A DNA stretch of 64,000 bases from Parasitella parasitica NRRL 2501 (taxonomy: Eukaryota > Fungi > Mucoromycota). A program made the position numbers and the translations under genes. The stretch lies in assembly GCA_025201805.1 (NCBI GenBank), contig MU619300.1, positions 85,832 to 149,831 on the forward strand, read 5' to 3'. The notes under the pieces are model-generated. The model ran no database searches and had not been told where the DNA came from. It saw nothing but the letters and a program-made list of their open reading frames with translations. Within the stretch, counting starts at the first letter, position 1. Each line of letters starts with the position of its first letter. Shown one piece after another: positions 10,170 to 22,570 of the stretch.

Positions 10170-11972
10170 ATGTCCAACGAAAACATTAGAGGTACAGCCG
10201 ATCTCTCAAAAATTCGTAGCAAATCGTACGACCTTCCAAGACTTAGACCCACAAGTGGGGCCCGTCAAGCCAGCCATGCTCATTTTGCTGACATTATCGA
10301 AGACGAAGGCGCTCCTACTTCTCGTCCCAACTCTGAAGCTATCACTACTATGCCCAATCACATCCTCCGCCCTCATTTCGACGAATCTAACAGAGTTAAT
10401 TCCACTGGTAATGTACGCATAGCGCCCAGACCCAAAATTTCAAGCAGAACCACTTCATTTGCCTCTGTTGCTGCCAAAAGAAAGTCTATAGCTAGAACTA
10501 TTTCCTCTCTTTCTTTGTATAGCAATTTCGCAGGCGAACGTTTAGATGACAACTATCGGGGTCCTGGATCACGTCGCAATAGCCTCGCAGACGCAGAGAA
10601 AAGACAAAGCTACATCTCGCAAAAATCTTCAATCCACAAGCATGAGGAATCTACTGTGGGCGACGAAATGGTGGAGGACATTGAAGATGCAGCGCCTAAG
10701 GCTTCTGTTGGGAAGGCCATGTTCATGTTTCTCAAAGCGTTCATTGGATCTGGGGTGCTATTTTTGCCTAAAGCGTAAGTTTATTGTGCTCGGGCGGGCG
10801 GAAAAATATGCGGGAAACTAACTCATTGTAGGTTTCAAAACGGTGGTCTAGCACTATCGATTGTATTGATGGTTGTCATTGCCGCTATTTGTTTCTTTGC
10901 TTTCCTGAGATTAGTGAATACGCAAAAAGTAATTGGTGGGTCTTATGGTGATATGGGAGGTCTGCTTTTTGGCCAACCCCTTCGTTTCACTGTCTTGTTC
11001 TTTATCGTTATCTCTCAAATTGGCTTTGTTTGCTCTTATTTCATCTTCGTATCCGGCAATCTTCTTAACGCTGTCAATGTGCTTTCAAATTGCACCGCCG
11101 GAATCGAGCAAAAATATTATGTTTGGATGCCCCTTGCTATTTTGATTCCACTTGCGTTGGTTAGACATATTGCAAAGTTATCTTTTACTGCCATTATTGC
11201 GGACGTCTTTATCTTGTTTGGCCTAGTTTGCATCATTTACTTTACTGCTGATCAATTGGCTCATAGTGGCGTTGGTCCCAACGTTGCGGCTGTCAACCCT
11301 GCCAACTTTGCCCTTATGATTGGTACTGCGACATTCTCATTCGAAGGTATTGGTCTTATCATCCCCATTGTCGAATCTATGGAGCATCCTGAGAAATTCC
11401 CCTTTGTGCTCACTCTGGGCATGGCTATTGTTTGTGTTATTTATATTTTAATCGGAACCATCTCATATCTGGCATACGGTGATACTATACAATCTGCTGT
11501 CATTTACAATTTTCCTCCTGACAACAACCTCACTATCGCTGTTGAACTGCTGTATTCTTTGGCTATTTGCTTAACTGCCCCCTTGATGCTTTTCCCTGCT
11601 TTAAAAATTATCGAAAATGGACTTTTCCGTAAATTCAGATCCGGTAAGGATAGTCTTCGCGTAAAGTGGTCCAAAAATGTATATAGGACTGCCTTGTGCG
11701 TACTCTGTGCCGCTATTGCTTTTGGTATCGGTGGCGATAATCTGGATAAGTTTGTCTCGTTAGTTGGCTCTGTCGCTTGTGTTCCTTTGTGCTTCATCTT
11801 CCCTGGCATGTTCCATTATAAGATTAGTAAGTCAACTGTGGACAAAATCCTCGATTCTCTTTTGATGATCTTTGGTTTGGGCATCATGATTTATACTTTG
11901 TATGTTTCAATTGACTCCTTTATTAATCCTGTATCCACTGGCGAAGCACTTGCGCCTTATTGCCCTGCTTAA
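10170..11972 (+). CDS. Aa_trans family (Avt3/Avt4-like vacuolar) amino-acid transporter, one intron ~10775-10831
   Basis: FLKAFIGSGVLFLPKA, FSFEGIGLIIPI, LDKFVSLVGS motifs; about 11 hydrophobic segments. Confidence 0.9.
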
Positions 11973-12175
11973 ATATCCTTTATATTTCCCCTTCTCCTAA
12001 ATATGCATATATGTATGTTGGCGCTTTTGTATTCATGCGAAATCAAGAAGCATTCTTTTTTTGTAAATATACCATATAAATAATGTAATCTTTTAATAAA
12101 ATTTTTCAATCTTGAAACAATATACTCAATTTCAGGCTAGATCCGTGCTATAAACAAATGGTTTTTATGGGACCT

Positions 12176-13258
12176 TTACAAGCGAGCACGGAAATAATCG
12201 CCCAGGGCCACCATCACCAAAGTTTGCCAAATGCCAAGACCAATGCGAGGTACGACGCCTCTGTAGAAGCCTTTGAGGCCATTCTTGCTGTAAATATATT
12301 TGGTTGCAGAGCCGATCGTCATTTTCTCAGGGCGCCCTTCAGTCCTTAGCTGACTTTGCATTTCAACGCGAATAACTTCAAGTGGTTGATTCCAGCAAGA
12401 CAACGCACCTGCAGCAATAGATGCCAAAGCTTTATCTATACCATCAGCTACACCTTTTTCTCCATGTCTTGCCTTTACAATGGCTTCCTGTGCAAATCTT
12501 GCAATGCCAAATCTAGAAGCCCAATTGGTACATTGGCGAAGTGCAACTGCGTTTACACCTTTATTGATGCCTGCAAACCCCTCCCTTCTATAGATATCTG
12601 CTGCAATCTTAAAAGTAGACTCAGTGCCAGCTGATAGGAGTGTTAGGTGCGATGATTACTACTACTCATTTCACGTATATACCTGATTTTTGTCTAGTCA
12701 CTTCAACAGTCTTCATAAATGTACAAAACCCCATGGTACTGTAAGCTTGAGCAATGCCACCACCCATCCCGCCAATAATACCAGCCTTTGATAGAGCATA
12801 TCAATTATATAGGTTTATGCCTAGCAATATTAACTTACCATAAATGGAGATGCACCAGCTACAGAAGCTCTGTACTCTAATTCTGAGGCAGTGAATAGTA
12901 ACACAGCGCCTTTGGTACTTGCTTCAATCCAAGCCCATGGGATGAGGCCTTGGTAGAAGCCAAAAACACCACCACGACCATAAATGGCCTTTAATCCCTC
13001 CCACATAGGCTGTCCGCGGTTGGCTGCCATTTGTGTCTTGATCACTTCAAAAGGCTGACCTAACGTTGAGGTCTCGAATAAATTCAAACCTGTTTTTGAT
13101 TGGAATTCACACGTCTTGTAAATGCCAATTCACATACGCTAGTAAAGAGCCTACATACCTGCACCAAGCAGCAATGTTTGATATGAGATTGGCTTCTTTT
13201 CAGCAATAGTTTTGTTAGAGAGAGGAATCACAGCAGTGGGTAACTTTGTAGTTGACAT
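12176..13258 (-). CDS. YHM2: Mitochondrial citrate/oxoglutarate carrier (4 exons)
   Basis: [50 protein letters not shown] and [14 protein letters not shown] closely match yeast Yhm2. Confidence 0.9.
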
Positions 13259-14219
13259 ACTGTTAAGGCCGAAATGGGGATTTACGAACTTGTTTGGAAC
13301 AGAAAAGAAAAACAGAGATGATTTTTATAACTAATTGAATTTATATGAGGTGACTTGAATGGTGCTTACTTCAAAGCATATCTTTTCCCTCGAGACATTT
13401 CACAACATGTGCAAAAAATCATGATAATATTCATAAACTTGTACTTGAGGGGATAACGAGCAAACCAGATGCACTAGTGTATGTGGATGCTCTGTTCAGT
13501 GTTTTGTACTTCAAAGCAGAAATCCATACATAATATGTGTTTGTTGTTACTGATGGCAATGTGCTCGGCTATATTTTCACATGTCAATTAAAAAAACATC
13601 CAGAATCTCACAATATTTATGAGCCCATAAATAAAGTATTTACTATGTTGATATCAAGGCACAAGAAGAAGGCGTAAAACTTTGATGGGGGTGGTGTATT
13701 TCCTTCTTGACGTGTTCAATTCTCCAGAACTAAATGGGCCGCTCAAACTCATAGTTTTTATTTAATGCCCTTTTTTTTAAATTGATACATTAGTCAAATA
13801 TAGTGCAACATATTTTACAAACTCGCAGAACACAGACTTTTTGTCGACCGGTTGAAAAAAGTAAATTTTCTTTAATCGCAGATCCTAAATGTGATGCCAG
13901 TAGGATATTTTTGGAAGTCTGCTTCAGATTTGCACGATCTTGCATTAATTTATGAATAAATGTATCTTTTAATAGCACGTTTCTAACATGAAACAAGGAA
14001 GGACATGCTCTACCTTATGCCAAGGCTTCAAAAACTAGAGTTTAAGGGCGGTTGCAATTCGACTAAGAAACATACAATATAGCAAGTTTTCCTGCTTTTG
14101 GATTTTCCTATTCAGGTTTGTACCTGTGCTTTCTCATTATACACAACACTGCTAATATAAATGGTGATATGGTAAAATAAAGAAAGAGATTTTATTGATT
14201 TATATACAAAAATAAATAT

Positions 14220-14417
14220 TTAATGAAGTTTTGGGCATTGCTTGGCCTCTTCAGTGTTGGTTTGTATATTTCCATGTTCATCAATTGTCATGGCATGACC
14301 AGTTTCCTTTTGATGAATTTTGTTTGCTTGTTCAGCAACCTTCTTGCGTTCATCATCGGTAGTAACTTGATGAGTTTTTTCGACAAGTTCTTCGAGTTTG
14401 GCTCCTTGAGAATTCAT
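14220..14417 (-). CDS. Small hydrophilic 65-aa hypothetical protein
   Basis: ATG in an aaaacATG context; TATATAAATA box ~55 nt upstream; charged composition; AT-rich 3' region. Confidence 0.55.
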   Translation of the reverse strand: MNSQGAKLEELVEKTHQVTTDDERKKVAEQANKIHQKETGHAMTIDEHGNIQTNTEEAKQCPKLH

Positions 14418-15674
14418 GTTTTATGTTGTAACGTGTGTACCGAATACTTGAGGTCTTTTGAAAAGAGTCTTATTTATATATAAGGCTTGTTTATGCGATT
14501 TTTGTTTCATTATCTCATCGGTACTTTACTAGTGTGGGAGTCTGATCCGCCTCAAACCAAGCAAATGTTGACTATGACGATGTTTCTCGGCAAATATGAT
14601 AGAATTTGCGACATTACTTTGTAGTCAGGAAGCTTGAAAATCTCTTACTTTATAATTTCACATTTGGAATAGCTAAATAAGTAAAAGTACCTAGCTTTTA
14701 TTGTGATACATAGTCGATTACTCTCAAACTATCCGTGAAAGACGGTGTTTTGCGTTTACAAAAAGGCTTGCCAACAGGGAGTAATTAATATGAAACCCAT
14801 TAAGCCAGGATTTTCATATACCAACAATCATTTCAATTGTCCCCACATGTTTCTAATGTGGAAGTTTGAAACGTCCTATTGCAGGGTACTCTCAAGCCTC
14901 ATGGAACTGAGAAGAGCATCAATCTAAATGTTACTTGGCCCACACTTGCGGGTAGTAAAGTTGATCTACTTGATAATATGAATGTTGACCCTTCACAGTA
15001 TCTCAATAGAAAGAAGGGGAAAGCAGAGACTAGATCTGTTAACTGAAAGAAAAAAAAAAAGACAAGTTCTTTCAAGTTTTCGAAGGGACCTAAATGTTGG
15101 AAAGAAAGACATTTACACGCTTTGCCTGCCATTAGAGGGCATTTGAAAACTCATTAAATCTGGTAGTCACCCTAGTCAAGAATTAACAAGTACTGGTATC
15201 TACTATTCGTGTCTAAACCGTGGAGCTAATCAACAATCATCAATGCAAAAAAATTAAAAAAAACAAAACCAAATATAACAGAAGAAGAAGCAGAAGAGCT
15301 CAATGAACAATCAGAGCTTATTCTGATAGAGATGAAGAGACAGCCCAATTACCCACCATTGTAATTAAAAAATGTGGTTCGTATTGAATTGGTTTTTCTG
15401 TGATATGTATTTTGAGGAAGAGCTTCACATCAGCAGGTCTTTTGAAAAAATTCGTGTCTTGACTGTATATGTCTTGCTTTCGACTTTTTACCAAACGTGC
15501 TATGAAACTCTCTGATAGGCCCAAATGAGCTCGGTGAAACTTATACATGAAATACAAGCTAAAGTCCGAAGTGGCAATTTAAATCGAATATGAAAAACAT
15601 GATCATTGAGATAAAATTAAATGATTTATTAAGTAGTAGATTGTAATTATGGGTTGCTAAAAAGTATTAGAGAT

Positions 15675-18388: not shown

Positions 18389-18451
18389 TCGCGTTATTCT
18401 TGCATGAAAGGACCTTGCATTCAGCTTATCGTCACGCGATTTAAGACGCGA
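18389..18451. promoter_or_regulatory. Three MCB-like ACGCGA elements upstream of the RNR gene
   Basis: TCGCGT 18389-18394, ACGCGA 18434-18439 and ACGCGA 18446-18451, about 85-145 nt before the ATG. CGCG is scarce in this AT-rich DNA. Confidence 0.55.
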
Positions 18452-18533
18452 TGTTTATTTATTTATAATCCAAAAAAGGATGTTTCATCGTTTTTCCCTC
18501 TTTCTTTCATCAAATAATTTTCACTGCCAAACT

Positions 18534-21088
18534 ATGTACGTTCTAAAGAGAGGTAAAGTATAGATGTCGTCGCATGTACGCAACGTGCCGCTCACCAGCT
18601 TGCTTTATTCGAAAGACGGAACCCAAGAAAAAGTCTTTTTCGATAAAATTAGCTCTCGCATCAACATCTTGTGCAAAGGCCTGGATGAAAACTTTGTTGA
18701 TCCTCCCAAGATCTCTCAAAAGGTAGTTACTGGCATGTATCCTGGTATTACCACTGTTCAGTTGGATAATTTGGCTGCAGAGATTGCTGTGGACATGACG
18801 GACATTCATCCTGACTATGCCGTTCTGGCTGCCCGGATCTCTGTCTCCAACCTTCAAAAGGAAACGCATGACAAATTCTCAGATGCCATGCAAGAGTTAT
18901 ACAACAACAAGCACCCCAAGACAGGCGCTTCCAATCCTTTGGTTTCCAAGGAGTTTTTAGACATGGTTTTAGAAAATGCAGACAAGATCAATGCTGCCAT
19001 CGATTACCAACGTGATTTCGACTTCAACTATTTTGGTTTCAAGATTCTCGAACAGAATTATCTCTTGAAGGTTGGTGACAAAATTGTCGAGCGTCCTCAG
19101 CAAATGCTGATGCGTGTTGCGCTCGCAATTCACGGCCACGATTTCGAATCTGCATTCCAGGCGTACGACTACACCTCCCGCCAGCTTTTTACTTATGCCG
19201 AAACAACCATCTTGAATGCTGGTACTGCAAACGGTCAGCTCTCTAGTTTCTTTCAAGTTCAAATGAAGGAAGATAGTATCGAGGGTATTTACGATACTGT
19301 CGCAACTTGTGCTCGTATCTCCAAAGCGTCTGGTACTGTCGGTATGAGCTTTCAAAAGATTCGTGCCTCGGGCTCTTATATCGCTGGTACTAATGGTACG
19401 TCTAACGGTATTATTCCCATGTTGCGTGTATTCAATGATGCTGCACGTTTCATCACTCCTGGTGCTAAAAAGGTAAAGGGTACGTATGCTGTTTATCTCG
19501 AGCCTTGGCATGCCGATATCTTTGAGTTTATTGATCTCTCGAAAAACTCTGGCGAGGAGAATCTCCGTGCTCGTCATCTCCTTCTTGGTCTTTGGATTCC
19601 TGACATCTTTATGAAGCGTAAGTTTTGCATTGGCATAATTGTGCCATGTGTTCTGTGCTAACCCTGCGGTGGTTTTATAGGTGTCGAAGAGAATGGGGAT
19701 TGGTCTTTAATGTGTCCTAATGAATGTCCTCGTCTTGATACCACTTATGGCCAAGAATTTGAGGATCTCTATCTGGGTTATGAAAAGGCTGGTAAGGCTA
19801 GAAAGACTGTATCTGCTCAAAAGCTATGGTTCTCTATTTTGGATGCTCAAATCGAGAGTAGCATGCCTTTCATGTGTTATAAAGGTATATCTGGCTTTAG
19901 TGATGAAGAGATACATTTGCTAACAGCATTTGCCATGCGATAGATGCTGCTAATGAAAAAAACAATCAAAAGAACCTTGGTGTCATCTCTGGATCCAACC
20001 TTCGTGCTGATATCATGCAATATTCGGATGCTGAAGAGGTCTCTTCCACCAATATTGCCTCCATCGCTCTTCCCAAGTGTGTTGATGCTCACACTCGCAC
20101 CTTCAACTTTGAAACTCTTCACGACATTGTCAAGCTTGTCATCAAAAACCTAGATAGAATGATTGATGCCAACAAGTACGTACTGGAAGAGGCCGAGAAG
20201 AGTGCTCTCAAGCACAGAGCTATCGGGTTAGGTGTTCAAGGCTTGGCTGACGTATTCTTGATGATGCATCATCCTTTTGATTCCCCTGAAGCCCGCCAGT
20301 TGAACAGAGATATCTTTGAGTCCATCTATTTTGCTGCCCTCGAAGCTTCTAATGAATTAGCACAAAAAAATGGTGCTTATCCTTCATATGAAGGCTCTCC
20401 CATCAGTCAAGGCATATTGCAACACGATTTATGGAATGTGGAAGGCTCTGATCGTCTTGATTGGGCTACGCTTCGTGCTAATATCAAGGAGCATGGTGTG
20501 CGTAACTCCCTCCTCGTCGCTCCTATGCCAACTACCACCACTAGCCAATTTCTCGGTAACAACGATGGCATTGAACCTTATCAGAGCATGGTTTTCACTC
20601 ATCGCTCTGCTACTGGCGAATGCCAAGCTGTCAACCCTCATTTGCTCAAGGACTTGATTGAGCGCGGTATGTGGAGCCCTCAAGTCAAAGATATGTTGAT
20701 CCAATCCAACGGCAGTGTCCAAAAGCTTCCTTTGATCTCTGATGATCTCAAGAAGCTGTACAAGACTGTGTGGGAAATCTCACAACGTGTTGTCATCGAT
20801 ATGGCTGCTGATCGTGCTGCTTTTATCGACCAGTCGCAATCACTCAACTTGTTCTCCGCCGACCCTAATTATAGTCGTCTTTCATCTATGCATTTTTACT
20901 GCTGGAAGAAGGGGCTGAAGACTGGTATGCAATATCTCAGGACGAGTCCTCTTGAAGCAATGAGATTAACTATGGGTGAAGAACAAAAGGAAGATATCGA
21001 ACAGGAAATTGAAAAGACGGCTGAAGATTTGGCTGCTATCGCTTGTTCTCTTGAAAACCCTGAAGCTTGTGTTAGCTGTAGCGGATAA
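18534..21088 (+). CDS. RNR1: Class Ia ribonucleotide reductase large subunit homolog, predicted catalytically inactive (exons 18534-18552, 18616-19617, 19681-19884, 19944-21088; 789 aa)
   Basis: ATP cone MYVLKRDG..., [61 protein letters not shown]. Three GT-AG introns give an uninterrupted frame. Catalytic residues are substituted (see findings). Confidence 0.93.
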
Positions 21089-21424
21089 ATTGCTTGATTT
21101 TATTTTATTTTTTGCATTGTTTAAACTTGTATCATATAATATCATTGTCAACCACTCTCCTTTCCCCTCTCTCTTACTTCAAAGAATCAATAAACAAAAA
21201 AGAACCCGTTTTCGCTAAAAGTAGTGGTTGTTGCGCATATAAATATTCCTTTCCTCTTGGAAAATCACATTCACGAGGAACTACTGAGAAGCCTATTATA
21301 CAATGATAAAGCTAAATTTTATTAATTATTTTTGTATTTTTAATACAAAGACGTGTGTAAGAATGTATGCATGTACATTGGGTCATTCAATATAAAGCTA
21401 TGGCAGGGTTGCACAACTAGGAAT

Positions 21425-22570
21425 CTACTGTAAATGGACAGTATACTGTAATTGAAGTCGATCCAAGTAGCTACAAACAAGATTCTTTGCAAAGCTATTG
21501 TCAAGTGCAATCCCAAAGGTTCGTTCCTTGTGACCCGTTCGCGTAGAATATGAAATGACTGGATCAGCGTAATAAGAAGGGCGAAGAAACACTAATTTAG
21601 TCTTCCAATCTTCTTTTTCAGGTGGGAGTGTATTGAAAATATACTTGAGGTACGTTAAAAGATTTGCTGGCTTGATATTCTTGATGCATAATTTGCTGTC
21701 TGCGAGGACATTCATCCATAGCATAAAATCTCTGACGGCTTCGAGCTGACTCGGTGGTTGTGAATCGTTTACTGAATCAAAGATACTGATCGTCAACTTT
21801 TCAGCATTAGTGAGGTTGAAGAGGAATTTGTTTAATTCTGCATGGTTAAACCCATTTGCTACTTTTGATGAAATCTCCAAATCTCGCAATGAGGAATGCT
21901 CCTTGGCCGGTATACGAGACATCAACGGTGATTGTGTCAATTGGAATTTCACGTATGAAAGTCGAGTACTAGTATTTAGCACAGAGGAAATGATTGCAAG
22001 CGGATCAGTCAGAGCACCTAGAGTCAATTCTCTAAGATTGGGAAAGCCGCAATTCAACACTAGCTCGCAATTTACTTCAGGGCTTTGTAGATCAAGCTGT
22101 GTTATTGACAGCCGAAATTTTCGGACGCACAAGCCGTAGTATATATCATAGTTAACGATAGGGATGCGCTGGAGCCGATCCAAGTGCATATCATCAGGCA
22201 ATGAACTGAGTGAATGAAGCACAGCATTATCAATAACGTTATTGCTGGTTATTGAGCGTATATCTCTGCAGTATTGAATAAACGATCTAACAGTTGTCGC
22301 AAACCTGTGCATGCTACTAATCTGGTAGACATTGAAATGAATACTTTTGACCAATGAGCCGCGCGGTGAGGAGCTGTATTGAGACTTCTGCATGTAGAGG
22401 GTGAACTTTACGAGGCTTATCTCGGTATTAAAATCCACTTTTTCGTATGGCTTTGATCCAACCGCGATATGCCATGTGTGACAAACAAGCTGGCATGCTG
22501 CAAGATCTGTCGAGTACAAGTTATTAAGTACGTTTTCAAGTAGCTCAACAGGCAAATTAGAAATTGACAT
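21425..22570 (-). CDS. F-box protein (intronless, lineage-expanded F-box/LRR-like type)
   Basis: N-terminal F-box LPVELLENVLNNL...CQLVCHTW followed by degenerate LRR-like segments. Confidence 0.8.
   Translation of the reverse strand: MSISNLPVELLENVLNNLYSTDLAACQLVCHTWHIAVGSKPYEKVDFNTEISLVKFTLYMQKSQYSSSPRGSLVKSIHFNVYQISSMHRFATTVRSFIQYCRDIRSITSNNVIDNAVLHSLSSLPDDMHLDRLQRIPIVNYDIYYGLCVRKFRLSITQLDLQSPEVNCELVLNCGFPNLRELTLGALTDPLAIISSVLNTSTRLSYVKFQLTQSPLMSRIPAKEHSSLRDLEISSKVANGFNHAELNKFLFNLTNAEKLTISIFDSVNDSQPPSQLEAVRDFMLWMNVLADSKLCIKNIKPANLLTYLKYIFNTLPPEKEDWKTKLVFLRPSYYADPVISYSTRTGHKERTFGIALDNSFAKNLVCSYLDRLQLQYTVHLQ

What the first reader, a model, noticed from the sequence alone, without database searches (positions are those of the whole stretch)
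18534..21088. Intact ribonucleotide reductase alpha subunit with its catalytic machinery removed: candidate RNR pseudoenzyme
Seen: a full-length 789-aa frame with canonical introns and no stops, yet the chemistry-critical positions are changed. SSCF->SSFF (TTC 19248-19250, proximal redox Cys, E. coli C225 equivalent). SNLCTEI->SNLRADI (CGT 20003-20005, thiyl-radical Cys C439, plus E441->D). AVCNLAS->SSTNIAS (ACC 20048-20050, distal Cys C462). GMYYLR->GMQYLR (CAA 20930-20932, first Tyr of the Y730/Y731 radical relay). Loop 2 YVDQGGNKRPG->[11 protein letters not shown] (Q and R lost). HASPT->YAETT and PTAST->PTTTT (substrate phosphate site). Known: these residues are essential for class Ia catalysis. 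Inference: the changes cluster at the active site while scaffold motifs remain near-canonical, which suggests selection for a non-catalytic role rather than random decay. It would be an alpha-subunit counterpart of the inactive yeast beta' subunit Rnr4. I do not know of a described case.
Basis: partly seen in the sequence, partly recalled or inferred. Interest (0 to 1): 0.92.

Follow-up and report, generated by a model that had tools for sequence, protein, structure and literature searches.

The report
Conserved catalytically dead RNR alpha paralogue
This Mucor gene makes a full-length, expressed and strongly conserved copy of the large subunit of ribonucleotide reductase. The copy has lost every residue needed for the chemistry, so it is a non-catalytic "alpha-prime" subunit, shared by Mucor, Rhizopus and their relatives and not described in any paper I could find.

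Summary
A four-exon gene (18534-21088, +) encodes a 789-aa class Ia RNR alpha homologue. Relative to human RRM1 it carries C218F, G247T, Q288P, R293V, C429R, E431D, C444T and Y737Q. N427, Y738 and the C-terminal CxxC tail are kept.

It is neither a pseudogene nor an assembly error:
- **Expression:** a public run holds a contig that lies on the gene with all three introns removed and no differences.
- **Orthologues:** at least 15 exist across four families of Mucorineae (Mucor, Mycotypha, Cokeromyces, Rhizopus, Choanephora, Gilbertella). None is broken and none keeps the full catalytic set.
- **Phylogeny:** the clade is monophyletic on a long stem inside a Mucorales alpha-paralogue clade that is canonical at all 15 scored positions.
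- **Selection:** pairwise dN/dS is 0.04-0.12.

The genome also holds three alpha genes with the catalytic residues intact and three beta genes with intact metal ligands and radical tyrosine.

Conservation is kept in the ATP-cone, the specificity site with loop 1, residues 701-735 and the CxxC tail. It is relaxed at the catalytic finger and the phosphate site.

My best reading is a non-catalytic alpha' that still assembles with RNR partners, probably as an alpha·alpha' heterodimer; this part is inferred.

Known precedents are yeast Rnr4 (beta side) and the inactive betaherpesvirus R1 homologues. I found no paper on a cellular dead alpha. The scan had already noted this same stretch (s1-785490), but not on other DNA.

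The parts
18390..18450 (.). Cluster of three ACGCG (MluI-cell-cycle-box-like) cores, 88-144 nt upstream of the ATG
   Evidence: the cores lie at 18390-18394 (-), 18434-18438 (+) and 18446-18450 (+), and only 27 occur in the whole 64 kb; similar cores lie 90-210 nt upstream of all three canonical alpha genes and upstream of the L012 orthologue. A role as a G1/S element is inferred, not shown.
18524..18533 (+). 5' UTR, at least as far as the transcript contig reaches
   Evidence: the contig of run X1 begins at 18524.
18534..18552 (+). Exon 1 (M-Y-V-L-K-R and the first base of D7)
   Evidence: joint skips 63, GT..AG. The same 19-nt first exon and intron position occur in orthologue L012.
18553..18615 (+). 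Intron 1 (63 nt, GT..AG)
18616..19617 (+). Exon 2: rest of the ATP-cone, the all-alpha domain and the start of the barrel, with F218, T247, the specificity site with loop 1, and loop 2
19248..19250 (+). TTC = F218, in place of the proximal redox Cys (human C218, E. coli C225)
   Evidence: In the clade this position is F in 14, A in 2 and D in 1.
19452..19481 (+). Loop 2, [10 protein letters not shown] (residues 286-295). Q288 to P and R293 to V are fixed across the clade.
   Evidence: P in 17 of 17; V in 16 and I in 1.
19618..19680 (+). Intron 2 (63 nt, GT..AG)
19681..19884 (+). Exon 3 (barrel domain)
19885..19943 (+). Intron 3 (59 nt, GT..AG). It is absent from orthologue L009.
19944..21088 (+). 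Exon 4: rest of the barrel, the linker and the CxxC tail; stop codon at 21086-21088
19997..20011 (+). N427-L-R429-A-D431. The thiyl-radical Cys and the catalytic Glu are replaced; the Asn is kept.
   Evidence: In the clade position 429 is H9 N3 Y2 R1 S1 C1 and position 431 is D9 N6 A2.
20048..20050 (+). ACC = T444, in place of the distal redox Cys (E. coli C462)
   Evidence: Across orthologues it varies (A, T, S, V; C in four).
20930..20935 (+). CAA TAT = Q-Y, in place of the Y737-Y738 radical-transfer dyad
   Evidence: In the clade the first position is Q in 16 and H in 1.
21038..21085 (+). C-terminal tail [16 protein letters not shown], with CxxC at 21068-21079
   Evidence: Within-clade identity is 88%, at least as high as in the canonical sister clade (81%).
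21089..21205 (+). 3' UTR, as far as the transcript contig reaches
   Evidence: the contig ends at 21205.

Best explanation
The gene encodes a non-catalytic paralogue of the class Ia RNR large subunit, which I call alpha-prime.

**Origin.** It arose by duplication of the Mucorales alpha paralogue whose loop 2 reads V-T-Q-G-G-G-K-R (C106 in this genome). The duplication lies at or near the base of the suborder Mucorineae.

[quoted passage not shown] It cannot reduce nucleotides.

**What is still under purifying selection.** The ATP-cone, the specificity site with loop 1 and the dimer-interface region, residues 701-735, and the CxxC tail that thioredoxin or glutaredoxin recharges. From memory, residues 701-735 include the cleft that docks the beta tail.

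**Most likely mechanism (inferred).** It still assembles into RNR complexes as an alpha·alpha' heterodimer with one of the three catalytic alphas. There it would supply the effector-binding half of a specificity site, whose effector is read by the loop 2 and catalytic site of the adjacent, active subunit. It would also supply a CxxC tail able to re-reduce the partner's active site in trans. That makes it an alpha-side counterpart of yeast Rnr4.

**How likely.** That it is a conserved, expressed, catalytically dead paralogue: about 0.9. That the heterodimer-partner mechanism is right, given that: about 0.4.
For: **Shown**
- All catalytic positions are replaced.
- A spliced transcript exists with no differences from the genome. 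Intron-free 789-aa contigs of the orthologue that clusters with Mucor hiemalis occur in two further runs, one starting right after an adapter remnant.
- 17 sequences were compared; the 16 orthologues are intact and span four families of Mucorineae.
- The clade is monophyletic (100*) with a stem of 0.61 changes per site, inside the canonical Mucorales clade.
- dN/dS is 0.04-0.12.
- The clade keeps 240 of the 291 columns that are invariant in canonical alphas.
- Region-wise identity within the clade versus within the canonical sister clade:
  - ATP-cone: 83% vs 83%
  - Specificity site and loop 1: 92% vs 93%
  - Residues 701-735: 86% vs 87%
  - Tail: 88% vs 81%
  - Catalytic finger 421-447: 64% vs 92%
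  - Phosphate site: 71% vs 100%
- Three canonical alpha and three canonical beta genes lie in the same genome. The beta tails end in FTLDADF or FSLDADF.
- ACGCG cores lie upstream of this gene, of all three canonical alpha genes and of one orthologue.
- A predicted complex of the M. lusitanicus orthologue with a 45-aa beta tail gave weak support only. The score was 0.57 and the best control 0.00. That mark was reached by 51 of 78 solved complexes and 2 of 108 mismatched pairs, but a score of 0.60 or under was seen in only 5 of those 78 solved complexes and in all 4 mismatches that passed. The runs agreed in at least 19% of contacts and the partner's pLDDT was at least 37. The pass may reflect memory of solved Rnr1-peptide complexes.

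**From the literature**
- Loop 2 links the specificity site of one subunit to the catalytic site of the adjacent one, and Q288 and R293 read the substrate (PMC3483043).
- The C-terminal cysteine pair re-reduces the active site (PMC4078304, PMC6382339).

**From memory, paper not readable here**
- Zhang et al. 2007 (PNAS 104:2217) showed that the yeast Rnr1 tail acts on the neighbouring monomer.
Against: - No physical evidence of any partner exists. Heterodimer and homodimer cannot be told apart from sequence, and the size cap of the complex tool excluded an alpha-alpha' test.
- Loop 2 is not merely relaxed. It is fixed in a new form ([10 protein letters not shown], 88% identity within the clade), as are F218 and Q737. 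That hints at a new, conserved use of the old active-site region, which the partner model does not explain.
- Pfam scores are lower than in the canonical sister: ATP-cone 35-44 bits against 58, barrel about 590 against about 733. Nucleotide binding at the activity site is therefore not assured.
- The clade evolves faster than its canonical sister in matched species pairs: 68-74% identity against 83-88%.
- dS is saturated (1.0-2.9), so the ratios are rough.
- The role of ACGCG motifs in Mucorales was not tested.
Confidence: 0.45

Rival explanations
1. Built-in negative regulator or decoy. The dead subunit titrates beta2 through its tail-docking cleft, or poisons alpha dimers and hexamers. It would damp dNTP synthesis much as Sml1, Spd1 or Dif1 do in yeasts, or buffer it against nucleotide levels through its retained allosteric sites.
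For: - Residues 701-735 and the ATP-cone are conserved.
- The predicted beta-tail docking has weak support: 0.57 against 0.00 for the best control, with all the caveats.
- The dimer-interface and specificity-site region is 92% conserved.
- The promoter carries the same ACGCG cores as the catalytic alpha genes.
Against: - A pure decoy has no evident need for the CxxC tail, yet the tail is the best-conserved part relative to the canonical clade (88% vs 81%).
- Nothing here measures stoichiometry or effect on activity.
Confidence: 0.25
2. Moonlighting nucleotide sensor or scaffold outside RNR. The fold and its ATP/dATP and dNTP sites are reused to report nucleotide status to another pathway. This would resemble the way herpesvirus R1 homologues were repurposed for signalling.
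For: - New residues are fixed across the clade in the old active-site region: F218, loop 2 as [11 protein letters not shown]737 and M624.
- There is precedent in the inactive viral R1 homologues.
Against: - There is no added domain or motif; length and architecture are exactly those of a canonical alpha.
- The RNR-specific tail is retained.
- No partner outside RNR is suggested by any result here.
Confidence: 0.15
3. It is still an enzyme, with altered chemistry or an altered radical route.
For: - N427 and Y738 are kept in the window's protein.
- A new Cys at residue 635 (G-E-C-Q) is present in 12 of 17 sequences.
Against: - The residues at 429 and 431 differ freely among orthologues (H, N, Y, R, S; D, N, A). 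This is the signature of relaxed positions, not of a new catalytic centre.
- Y738 is F in many orthologues.
- The radical relay and both redox cysteines are gone.
Confidence: 0.03
4. It is a young pseudogene or an assembly or annotation artefact.
For: None was found.
Against: - A spliced, identical transcript exists.
- The frames are intact in 17 sequences from four families.
- dN/dS is 0.04-0.12.
- Introns differ between species while the frame is kept.
Confidence: 0.01

Closest known systems
Yeast Rnr4 (beta-prime), the non-catalytic partner of Rnr2
   Same: A paralogue of an RNR subunit that has lost the residues needed for its part of the chemistry, yet is conserved and expressed beside catalytic paralogues.
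   Different: Rnr4 is a small (beta) subunit that lost its iron ligands, and its heterodimer with Rnr2 is shown by experiment. Here it is the large (alpha) subunit, and the partner is only inferred. All three beta genes of this genome keep their metal ligands and the radical tyrosine.
Betaherpesvirus inactive R1 homologues (HCMV UL45, MCMV M45, HHV-6B R1)
   Same: Alpha-subunit homologues that have lost enzymatic activity and persist under selection (PMC5469499, PMC11772975).
   Different: Those are viral and act on host NF-kB and cell-death signalling. From memory, they are far more diverged and carry extra N-terminal parts. This protein is cellular, sits inside the Mucorales alpha clade, keeps about 64% identity to its canonical sister, and retains the ATP-cone and CxxC tail.
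Canonical eukaryotic class Ia RNR alpha (human RRM1, yeast Rnr1/Rnr3; own paralogues C157, C172, C106)
   Same: Same length and three-domain architecture; E about 1e-130 to human RRM1 for each half; conserved specificity site, loop 1 and CxxC tail; ACGCG cores upstream.
   Different: C218, G247, Q288, R293, C429, E431, C444, the A605-S606 motif and Y737 are all replaced.

Membership tests
Class Ia RNR alpha as a catalytic enzyme (NrdA/RRM1/Rnr1) | ATP-cone, all-alpha domain and ten-stranded barrel architecture | tested here: met
   Pfam PF03477, PF00317 and PF02867 matched exon by exon and on full-length orthologues.
Class Ia RNR alpha as a catalytic enzyme (NrdA/RRM1/Rnr1) | Thiyl-radical cysteine on the finger loop (human C429, E. 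coli C439), with N427 and E431 | tested here: not met
   R429 and D431; N427 is kept. These positions vary among orthologues.
Class Ia RNR alpha as a catalytic enzyme (NrdA/RRM1/Rnr1) | Redox-active cysteine pair C218/C444 (E. coli C225/C462) | tested here: not met
   F218 and T444. No orthologue has both.
Class Ia RNR alpha as a catalytic enzyme (NrdA/RRM1/Rnr1) | Tyr-Tyr radical-transfer dyad (human Y737/Y738, E. coli Y730/Y731) | tested here: not met
   Q-Y in the window; Q-F or Q-Y in all other orthologues except one, which has H-Y.
Class Ia RNR alpha as a catalytic enzyme (NrdA/RRM1/Rnr1) | Loop 2 residues Q288 and R293, which read the substrate base | tested here: not met
   P288 and V293, fixed across the clade. 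Their role is taken from PMC3483043.
Class Ia RNR alpha as a catalytic enzyme (NrdA/RRM1/Rnr1) | C-terminal CxxC shuttle | tested here: met
   A-C-V-S-C-S-G at the C-terminus, conserved in all 17 clade sequences.
Non-catalytic RNR pseudo-subunit (Rnr4-like concept) | A paralogue of a catalytic subunit that lacks the catalytic residues while catalytic copies coexist | tested here: met
   Three canonical alpha loci lie in the same genome. The canonical co-orthologue is also present in R. microsporus and R. stolonifer.
Non-catalytic RNR pseudo-subunit (Rnr4-like concept) | Maintained by purifying selection and expressed | tested here: met
   dN/dS 0.04-0.12; spliced transcripts.
Non-catalytic RNR pseudo-subunit (Rnr4-like concept) | Forms a heterodimer with the catalytic paralogue and is needed for full activity | not testable with these tools
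This needs co-purification and reconstitution.
Betaherpesvirus inactive R1 homologues | Viral descent | tested here: not met
   The clade nests within the cellular Mucorales alphas with 97-100* support. The gene has spliceosomal introns at positions shared with the canonical paralogue C106.

The most novel reading that the evidence does not exclude
Mucorineae run part of their ribonucleotide reduction through an obligate asymmetric alpha·alpha' large subunit. One protomer does the chemistry. The other is a dedicated allosteric and redox-relay protomer that supplies the effector site and the CxxC tail in trans. This would be the first cellular alpha-side equivalent of Rnr2·Rnr4. It would also be a natural experiment on half-sites reactivity in class Ia RNR, in a group that includes the agents of mucormycosis.
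Probability: 0.3. Interest if true: 0.9.

Novelty: new variant of a known kind. Interest (0 to 1): 0.78.

Why it matters
RNR is among the most studied enzymes, and its large subunit is regarded as universally catalytic in cells. The only known dead alphas are viral, and the only known cellular pseudo-subunit is on the beta side (Rnr4).

A dead alpha that has been kept since near the base of the suborder Mucorineae, expressed and constrained at its allosteric sites and redox tail, gives a direct handle on three open questions:
- Do the two protomers of an alpha dimer need to be equivalent (half-sites reactivity)?
- Does the C-terminal tail work in trans in vivo?
- How do organisms without Sml1-type inhibitors tune dNTP supply?

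There is also an annotation problem. In public records these proteins are named "alpha subunit of ribonucleoside-diphosphate reductase" or "ribonucleotide reductase". Counts of RNR genes in Mucor and Rhizopus, and any reasoning about RNR as a drug target there, currently include a non-enzyme.

Tried and rejected
- **Representative search.** The search of 50%-identity representatives with exon 4 gave only canonical or intein-bearing alphas at 44-64% identity and no orthologue. The apparent odd motifs among its hits were mostly intein gaps or retained introns in gene models.
- **Length limits.** The 0.55-1.75 length rule hid full-length orthologues from the exon-4 query. L012:7429-8826 could not serve as a longer query because its intron holds a stop. 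A stop-free stretch of orthologue L009 (1012-2370) did serve. Its first five codons are intronic and were excluded with the region option.
- **Joined model left out of database tools.** The joined 789-aa model of the window was never sent to a database, folding or look-up tool. Database searches were made exon by exon, by reference. As a result, no full-length query search, no structure prediction and no exact look-up of the window's own protein were run. The exons were joined only inside local scripts, read from window.fa, for alignment, the tree and dN/dS.
- **Complex prediction.** The prediction of the orthologue with a beta tail gave weak support only (0.57 against a best control of 0.00). 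I do not count it as evidence of binding.
- **Heterodimer prediction.** An alpha-alpha' prediction was not attempted. It exceeds the size cap and would not discriminate.
- **YN00.** It failed to converge for most pairs because dS is saturated, so NG86 values are reported.
- **Literature.** Zhang et al. 2007 could not be read. Searches for a fungal or cellular dead alpha found nothing.
- **RNA runs.** Only one public run holds the window's own sequence, kept as contigs and labelled RNA only as a guess. Expression level relative to the catalytic alphas could not be measured.
Full report
**1. The observation**

Reading the sequence and translating the in-frame parts of the exons gives a four-exon gene on the + strand:
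- E1: 18534-18552
- E2: 18616-19617
- E3: 19681-19884
- E4: 19944-21088

The three introns are 63, 63 and 59 nt, all GT..AG. The joined frame has 789 codons and no internal stop. Pfam finds ATP-cone, Ribonuc_red_lgN and Ribonuc_red_lgC across the exons. Each half matches human RRM1 (3hnc) and yeast Rnr1 at E about 1e-125 to 1e-135.

- C218F (TTC, 19248-19250)
- C429R (CGT, 20003-20005)
- E431D
- C444T (ACC, 20048-20050)
- Y737Q (CAA, 20930-20932)
- Loop 2: Y-V-D-Q-G-G-N-K-R-P-G to [11 protein letters not shown]
- H-A-S-P-T to Y-A-E-T-T
- P-T-A-S-T to P-T-T-T-T

G247 is also replaced, by T. N427, Y738 and the C-terminal A-C-V-S-C-S-G are kept.

**2. It is expressed, and the sequence is right**

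Only one public run holds this stretch. It is kept as contigs and labelled RNA as a guess. One of its contigs, 2498 nt long, lies on 18524-21205 with all three predicted introns removed exactly at GT..AG and with no differing letter. A contig that skips three introns is a spliced transcript. It also rules out an assembly error at the cysteine codons.

In two other runs, contigs of 2.5-2.7 kb carry the uninterrupted 789-aa frame of an orthologue whose 90% cluster includes a Mucor hiemalis protein. One contig begins right after a sequencing-adapter remnant. All five genomic copies seen here have introns, so these contigs are most simply cDNA.

**3. The genome has its working enzyme elsewhere**

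A six-frame Pfam search of the window's own assembly (32.8 Mb, 450 contigs) finds three more alpha loci, on contigs C157, C172 and C106. All three carry S-S-C-F, S-N-L-C-T-E-I, A-V-C-N-L, P-T-A-S-T, G-M-Y-Y (G-Q-Y-Y in C172) and Q/R in loop 2.

There are also three beta loci. Each has intact metal ligands and the radical tyrosine, and ends in FTLDADF or FSLDADF. There is no Rnr4-like beta.

C106 is the closest paralogue, at 65% identity in the N-terminal half. Its alignment breaks where the window gene has introns 2 and 3.

**4. Orthologues**

Searching exon 4 by reference found six fragments at 78-82% identity that share the losses. Their contigs (L009-L015) hold the rest of the gene, with partly different intron sets.

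Full-length relatives lay outside the length rule for an exon query. I therefore used a stop-free stretch of L009 (1012-2370). Its first five codons are intronic and were excluded through the region option. This brought in named proteins from:
- Mucor mucedo
- M. lusitanicus (92% identical to the window's protein)
- Cokeromyces
- Benjaminiella
- Mycotypha
- Rhizopus microsporus, R. arrhizus and R. stolonifer
- Gilbertella
- Choanephora

None of them has the full catalytic set:

| Position | Residues found in the clade |
|---|---|
| 218 | F, A or D |
| 288 | always P |
| 293 | V or I |
| 429 | H, N, Y, R, S (C once) |
| 431 | D, N or A |
| 444 | A, T, S, V (C in four) |
| 737 | Q (H once) |

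The next hits, at 60-65% identity, are canonical at every position scored. They come from Lichtheimia, Syncephalastrum, Phycomyces, Cunninghamella, Apophysomyces, Pilobolus, Umbelopsis and others.

By NCBI taxonomy, the species that carry the dead copy fall in four of the six families of the suborder Mucorineae. It was not listed for Pilobolaceae, Backusellaceae or other suborders. That is a failure to find it, not proof of absence.

**5. Phylogeny and selection**

A maximum-likelihood tree of 47 alphas (quick search, LG+C20+F+G4, metazoan outgroup) puts the 17 dead sequences on one side of a branch with 100* support and a length of 0.61 changes per site. That branch sits inside the Mucorales clade with V-T-Q-G-G-G-K-R in loop 2, which also contains C106.

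Inside the dead clade, Choanephora groups with Gilbertella, the three Rhizopus group together, and the Mucor sequences group together.

Selection:
- Pairwise NG86 dN/dS between the window and four genomic orthologues, and among those orthologues, is 0.06-0.12 (dN 0.07-0.18, dS 1.0-2.2).
- Against the M. hiemalis-cluster cDNA it is 0.04.
- dS is saturated, so the ratios are rough, but dN is far below dS.
- In matched species pairs and columns, the dead copy is 68-74% identical where the canonical sister is 83-88%. It evolves roughly twice as fast but remains strongly constrained.

**6. Where the constraint lies**

Of 291 columns that are at least 95% invariant in the 30 canonical sequences:
- The dead clade keeps 240.
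- 26 are lost and variable: C218, G247, C429, T430, E431, A605, S606 and others.
- 25 are replaced by a new residue that is itself conserved: P203T, T282A, V286I, Q288P, R293V, Y737Q, N624M, E55Q, T63I, D327H and others.

Mean pairwise identity by region, within the dead clade versus within the canonical sister clade:

| Region | Dead clade | Canonical sister |
|---|---|---|
| ATP-cone | 83% | 83% |
| Specificity site and loop 1 | 92% | 93% |
| Loop 2 | 88% | 97% |
| Residues 701-735 | 86% | 87% |
| CxxC tail | 88% | 81% |
| Finger region 421-447 | 64% | 92% |
| Phosphate site | 71% | 100% |
| Residues 611-700 | 68% | 88% |

Loop 2 is only 39% identical between the two clades.

Pfam scores of full-length orthologues are lower than those of the sister clade: barrel about 590 against about 733 bits, ATP-cone 35-44 against 58.

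**7. Mechanism**

What is shown: the protein cannot carry out the radical and thiol chemistry of RNR, it is made, and it is under purifying selection. That selection is focused on the nucleotide-effector and dimer region, the ATP-cone, residues 701-735 and the redox tail. From memory, residues 701-735 include the cleft that docks the beta tail.

What follows from the literature:
- Effector binding at the specificity site drives dimerisation.
- Loop 2 links the specificity site of one subunit to the catalytic site of the adjacent one.
- Q288 and R293 read the substrate (PMC3483043).
- The C-terminal cysteine pair re-reduces the active-site disulfide and is itself reduced by thioredoxin or glutaredoxin (PMC4078304, PMC6382339).

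From memory, and not readable here: Zhang et al. 2007 showed that the tail of one yeast Rnr1 protomer serves the neighbouring protomer.

Inference: a dead protomer that keeps the effector-binding half-site and the tail, but not the substrate-reading residues of its own loop 2, is what one would expect of the silent half of an alpha·alpha' heterodimer. I give this about 0.4.

The alternatives:
- **Decoy or damper of RNR (0.25).** It explains the docking region but not the tail.
- **Role outside RNR (0.15).** It would explain the newly fixed residues in the old active site.
- **New chemistry (0.03).**
- **Decay or artefact (0.01).**

A predicted complex of the M. lusitanicus orthologue with a 45-residue beta tail gave weak support only:
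- Score 0.57; best control 0.00.
- That mark was reached by 51 of 78 solved complexes and 2 of 108 mismatched pairs.
- A score of 0.60 or under was seen in only 5 of those 78 solved complexes and in all 4 mismatches that passed.
- The runs agreed in at least 19% of contacts, and the partner's pLDDT was at least 37.

It may reflect memory of solved Rnr1-peptide complexes and is not counted as evidence of binding.

Three ACGCG cores lie 88-144 nt upstream of the ATG, out of 27 in the whole 64 kb. Similar cores lie upstream of all three catalytic alpha genes and of the L012 orthologue. This suggests shared G1/S-type control, which is an inference.

**8. Comparison with what is known**

It works like a pseudo-subunit. 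The nearest cellular analogue is yeast Rnr4, but that is on the beta side. The nearest alpha-side analogues are the inactive R1 homologues of betaherpesviruses. This protein is not of viral descent, and it keeps far more of the canonical protein.

It fails the defining catalytic features of class Ia alpha, so it should not be filed as a ribonucleotide reductase enzyme, although public records name it so.

Eight full-text searches, five of them aimed at a fungal or cellular dead alpha, found no paper describing a cellular dead alpha. This is absence within the library searched, not proof.

**9. Verdict**

I file it as a new variant of a known kind: a pseudoenzyme paralogue of an RNR subunit. 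Interest is 0.78. It is a surprise in a very well-studied enzyme, it makes the questions of protomer asymmetry and trans-acting tail directly testable, and it corrects the annotation of RNR genes in Mucor and Rhizopus.

Noticed in passing
P0057 (UniRef A0A7E4W9P5, Panagrellus redivivus, 962 aa) and P0051 (Logan contig, 866 aa): Two other alpha-like proteins, one from a nematode, have lost several of these residues: P0051 reads C218S, C444S and Y738K and keeps C429 and E431; P0057 also has N427S and E431G. Neither ends in a CxxC tail. They are about 47-48% identical to the window's protein. This may be an independent case of a redox-dead alpha paralogue in a cellular organism.
   Followed up: partly
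G000 contig C55:90414-93133 (loci L017, L018) and C7:367495-368268 (L016): The genome has three beta (small-subunit) genes, two of them in tandem on the same strand about 1 kb apart. All have intact metal ligands and the radical tyrosine, and all end in FTLDADF or FSLDADF, the same heptapeptide as the mammalian R2 C-terminus.
   Followed up: partly
G000 contigs C157 (L001), C172 (L002), C106 (L004/L006): There are three catalytic alpha paralogues of two deep lineages. C157 and C172 group with Backusella and Calcarisporiella. C106 belongs to a separate clade with V-T-Q-G-G-G-K-R in loop 2, which also includes a Mortierellomycotina sequence (Benniella). What distinguishes the two catalytic lineages functionally is unknown.
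   Followed up: partly
one search hit list (P0305, P0306, P0320 and others): Alphas of 785-793 aa from Bacteroidota (Cyclobacteriaceae, Roseivirga) are 54-56% identical to the fungal query, with the same three-domain architecture. That is as close as the animal alphas are. It suggests an old transfer of the eukaryote-type class Ia alpha between eukaryotes and Bacteroidota.
   Followed up: no
window 21425-22570 (-): The gene downstream on the opposite strand is a 381-aa open frame. From memory, its N-terminus (L-P-V-E-L-L-E-N-V-L-N-N-L) looks like an F-box. It was not analysed.
   Followed up: no
L012:9719-10972 and 11878-14647: In the metagenomic orthologue's contig, the dead-alpha gene is followed by a PALP-domain gene and a FancD2-like gene. 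Synteny with the window was not checked.
   Followed up: no
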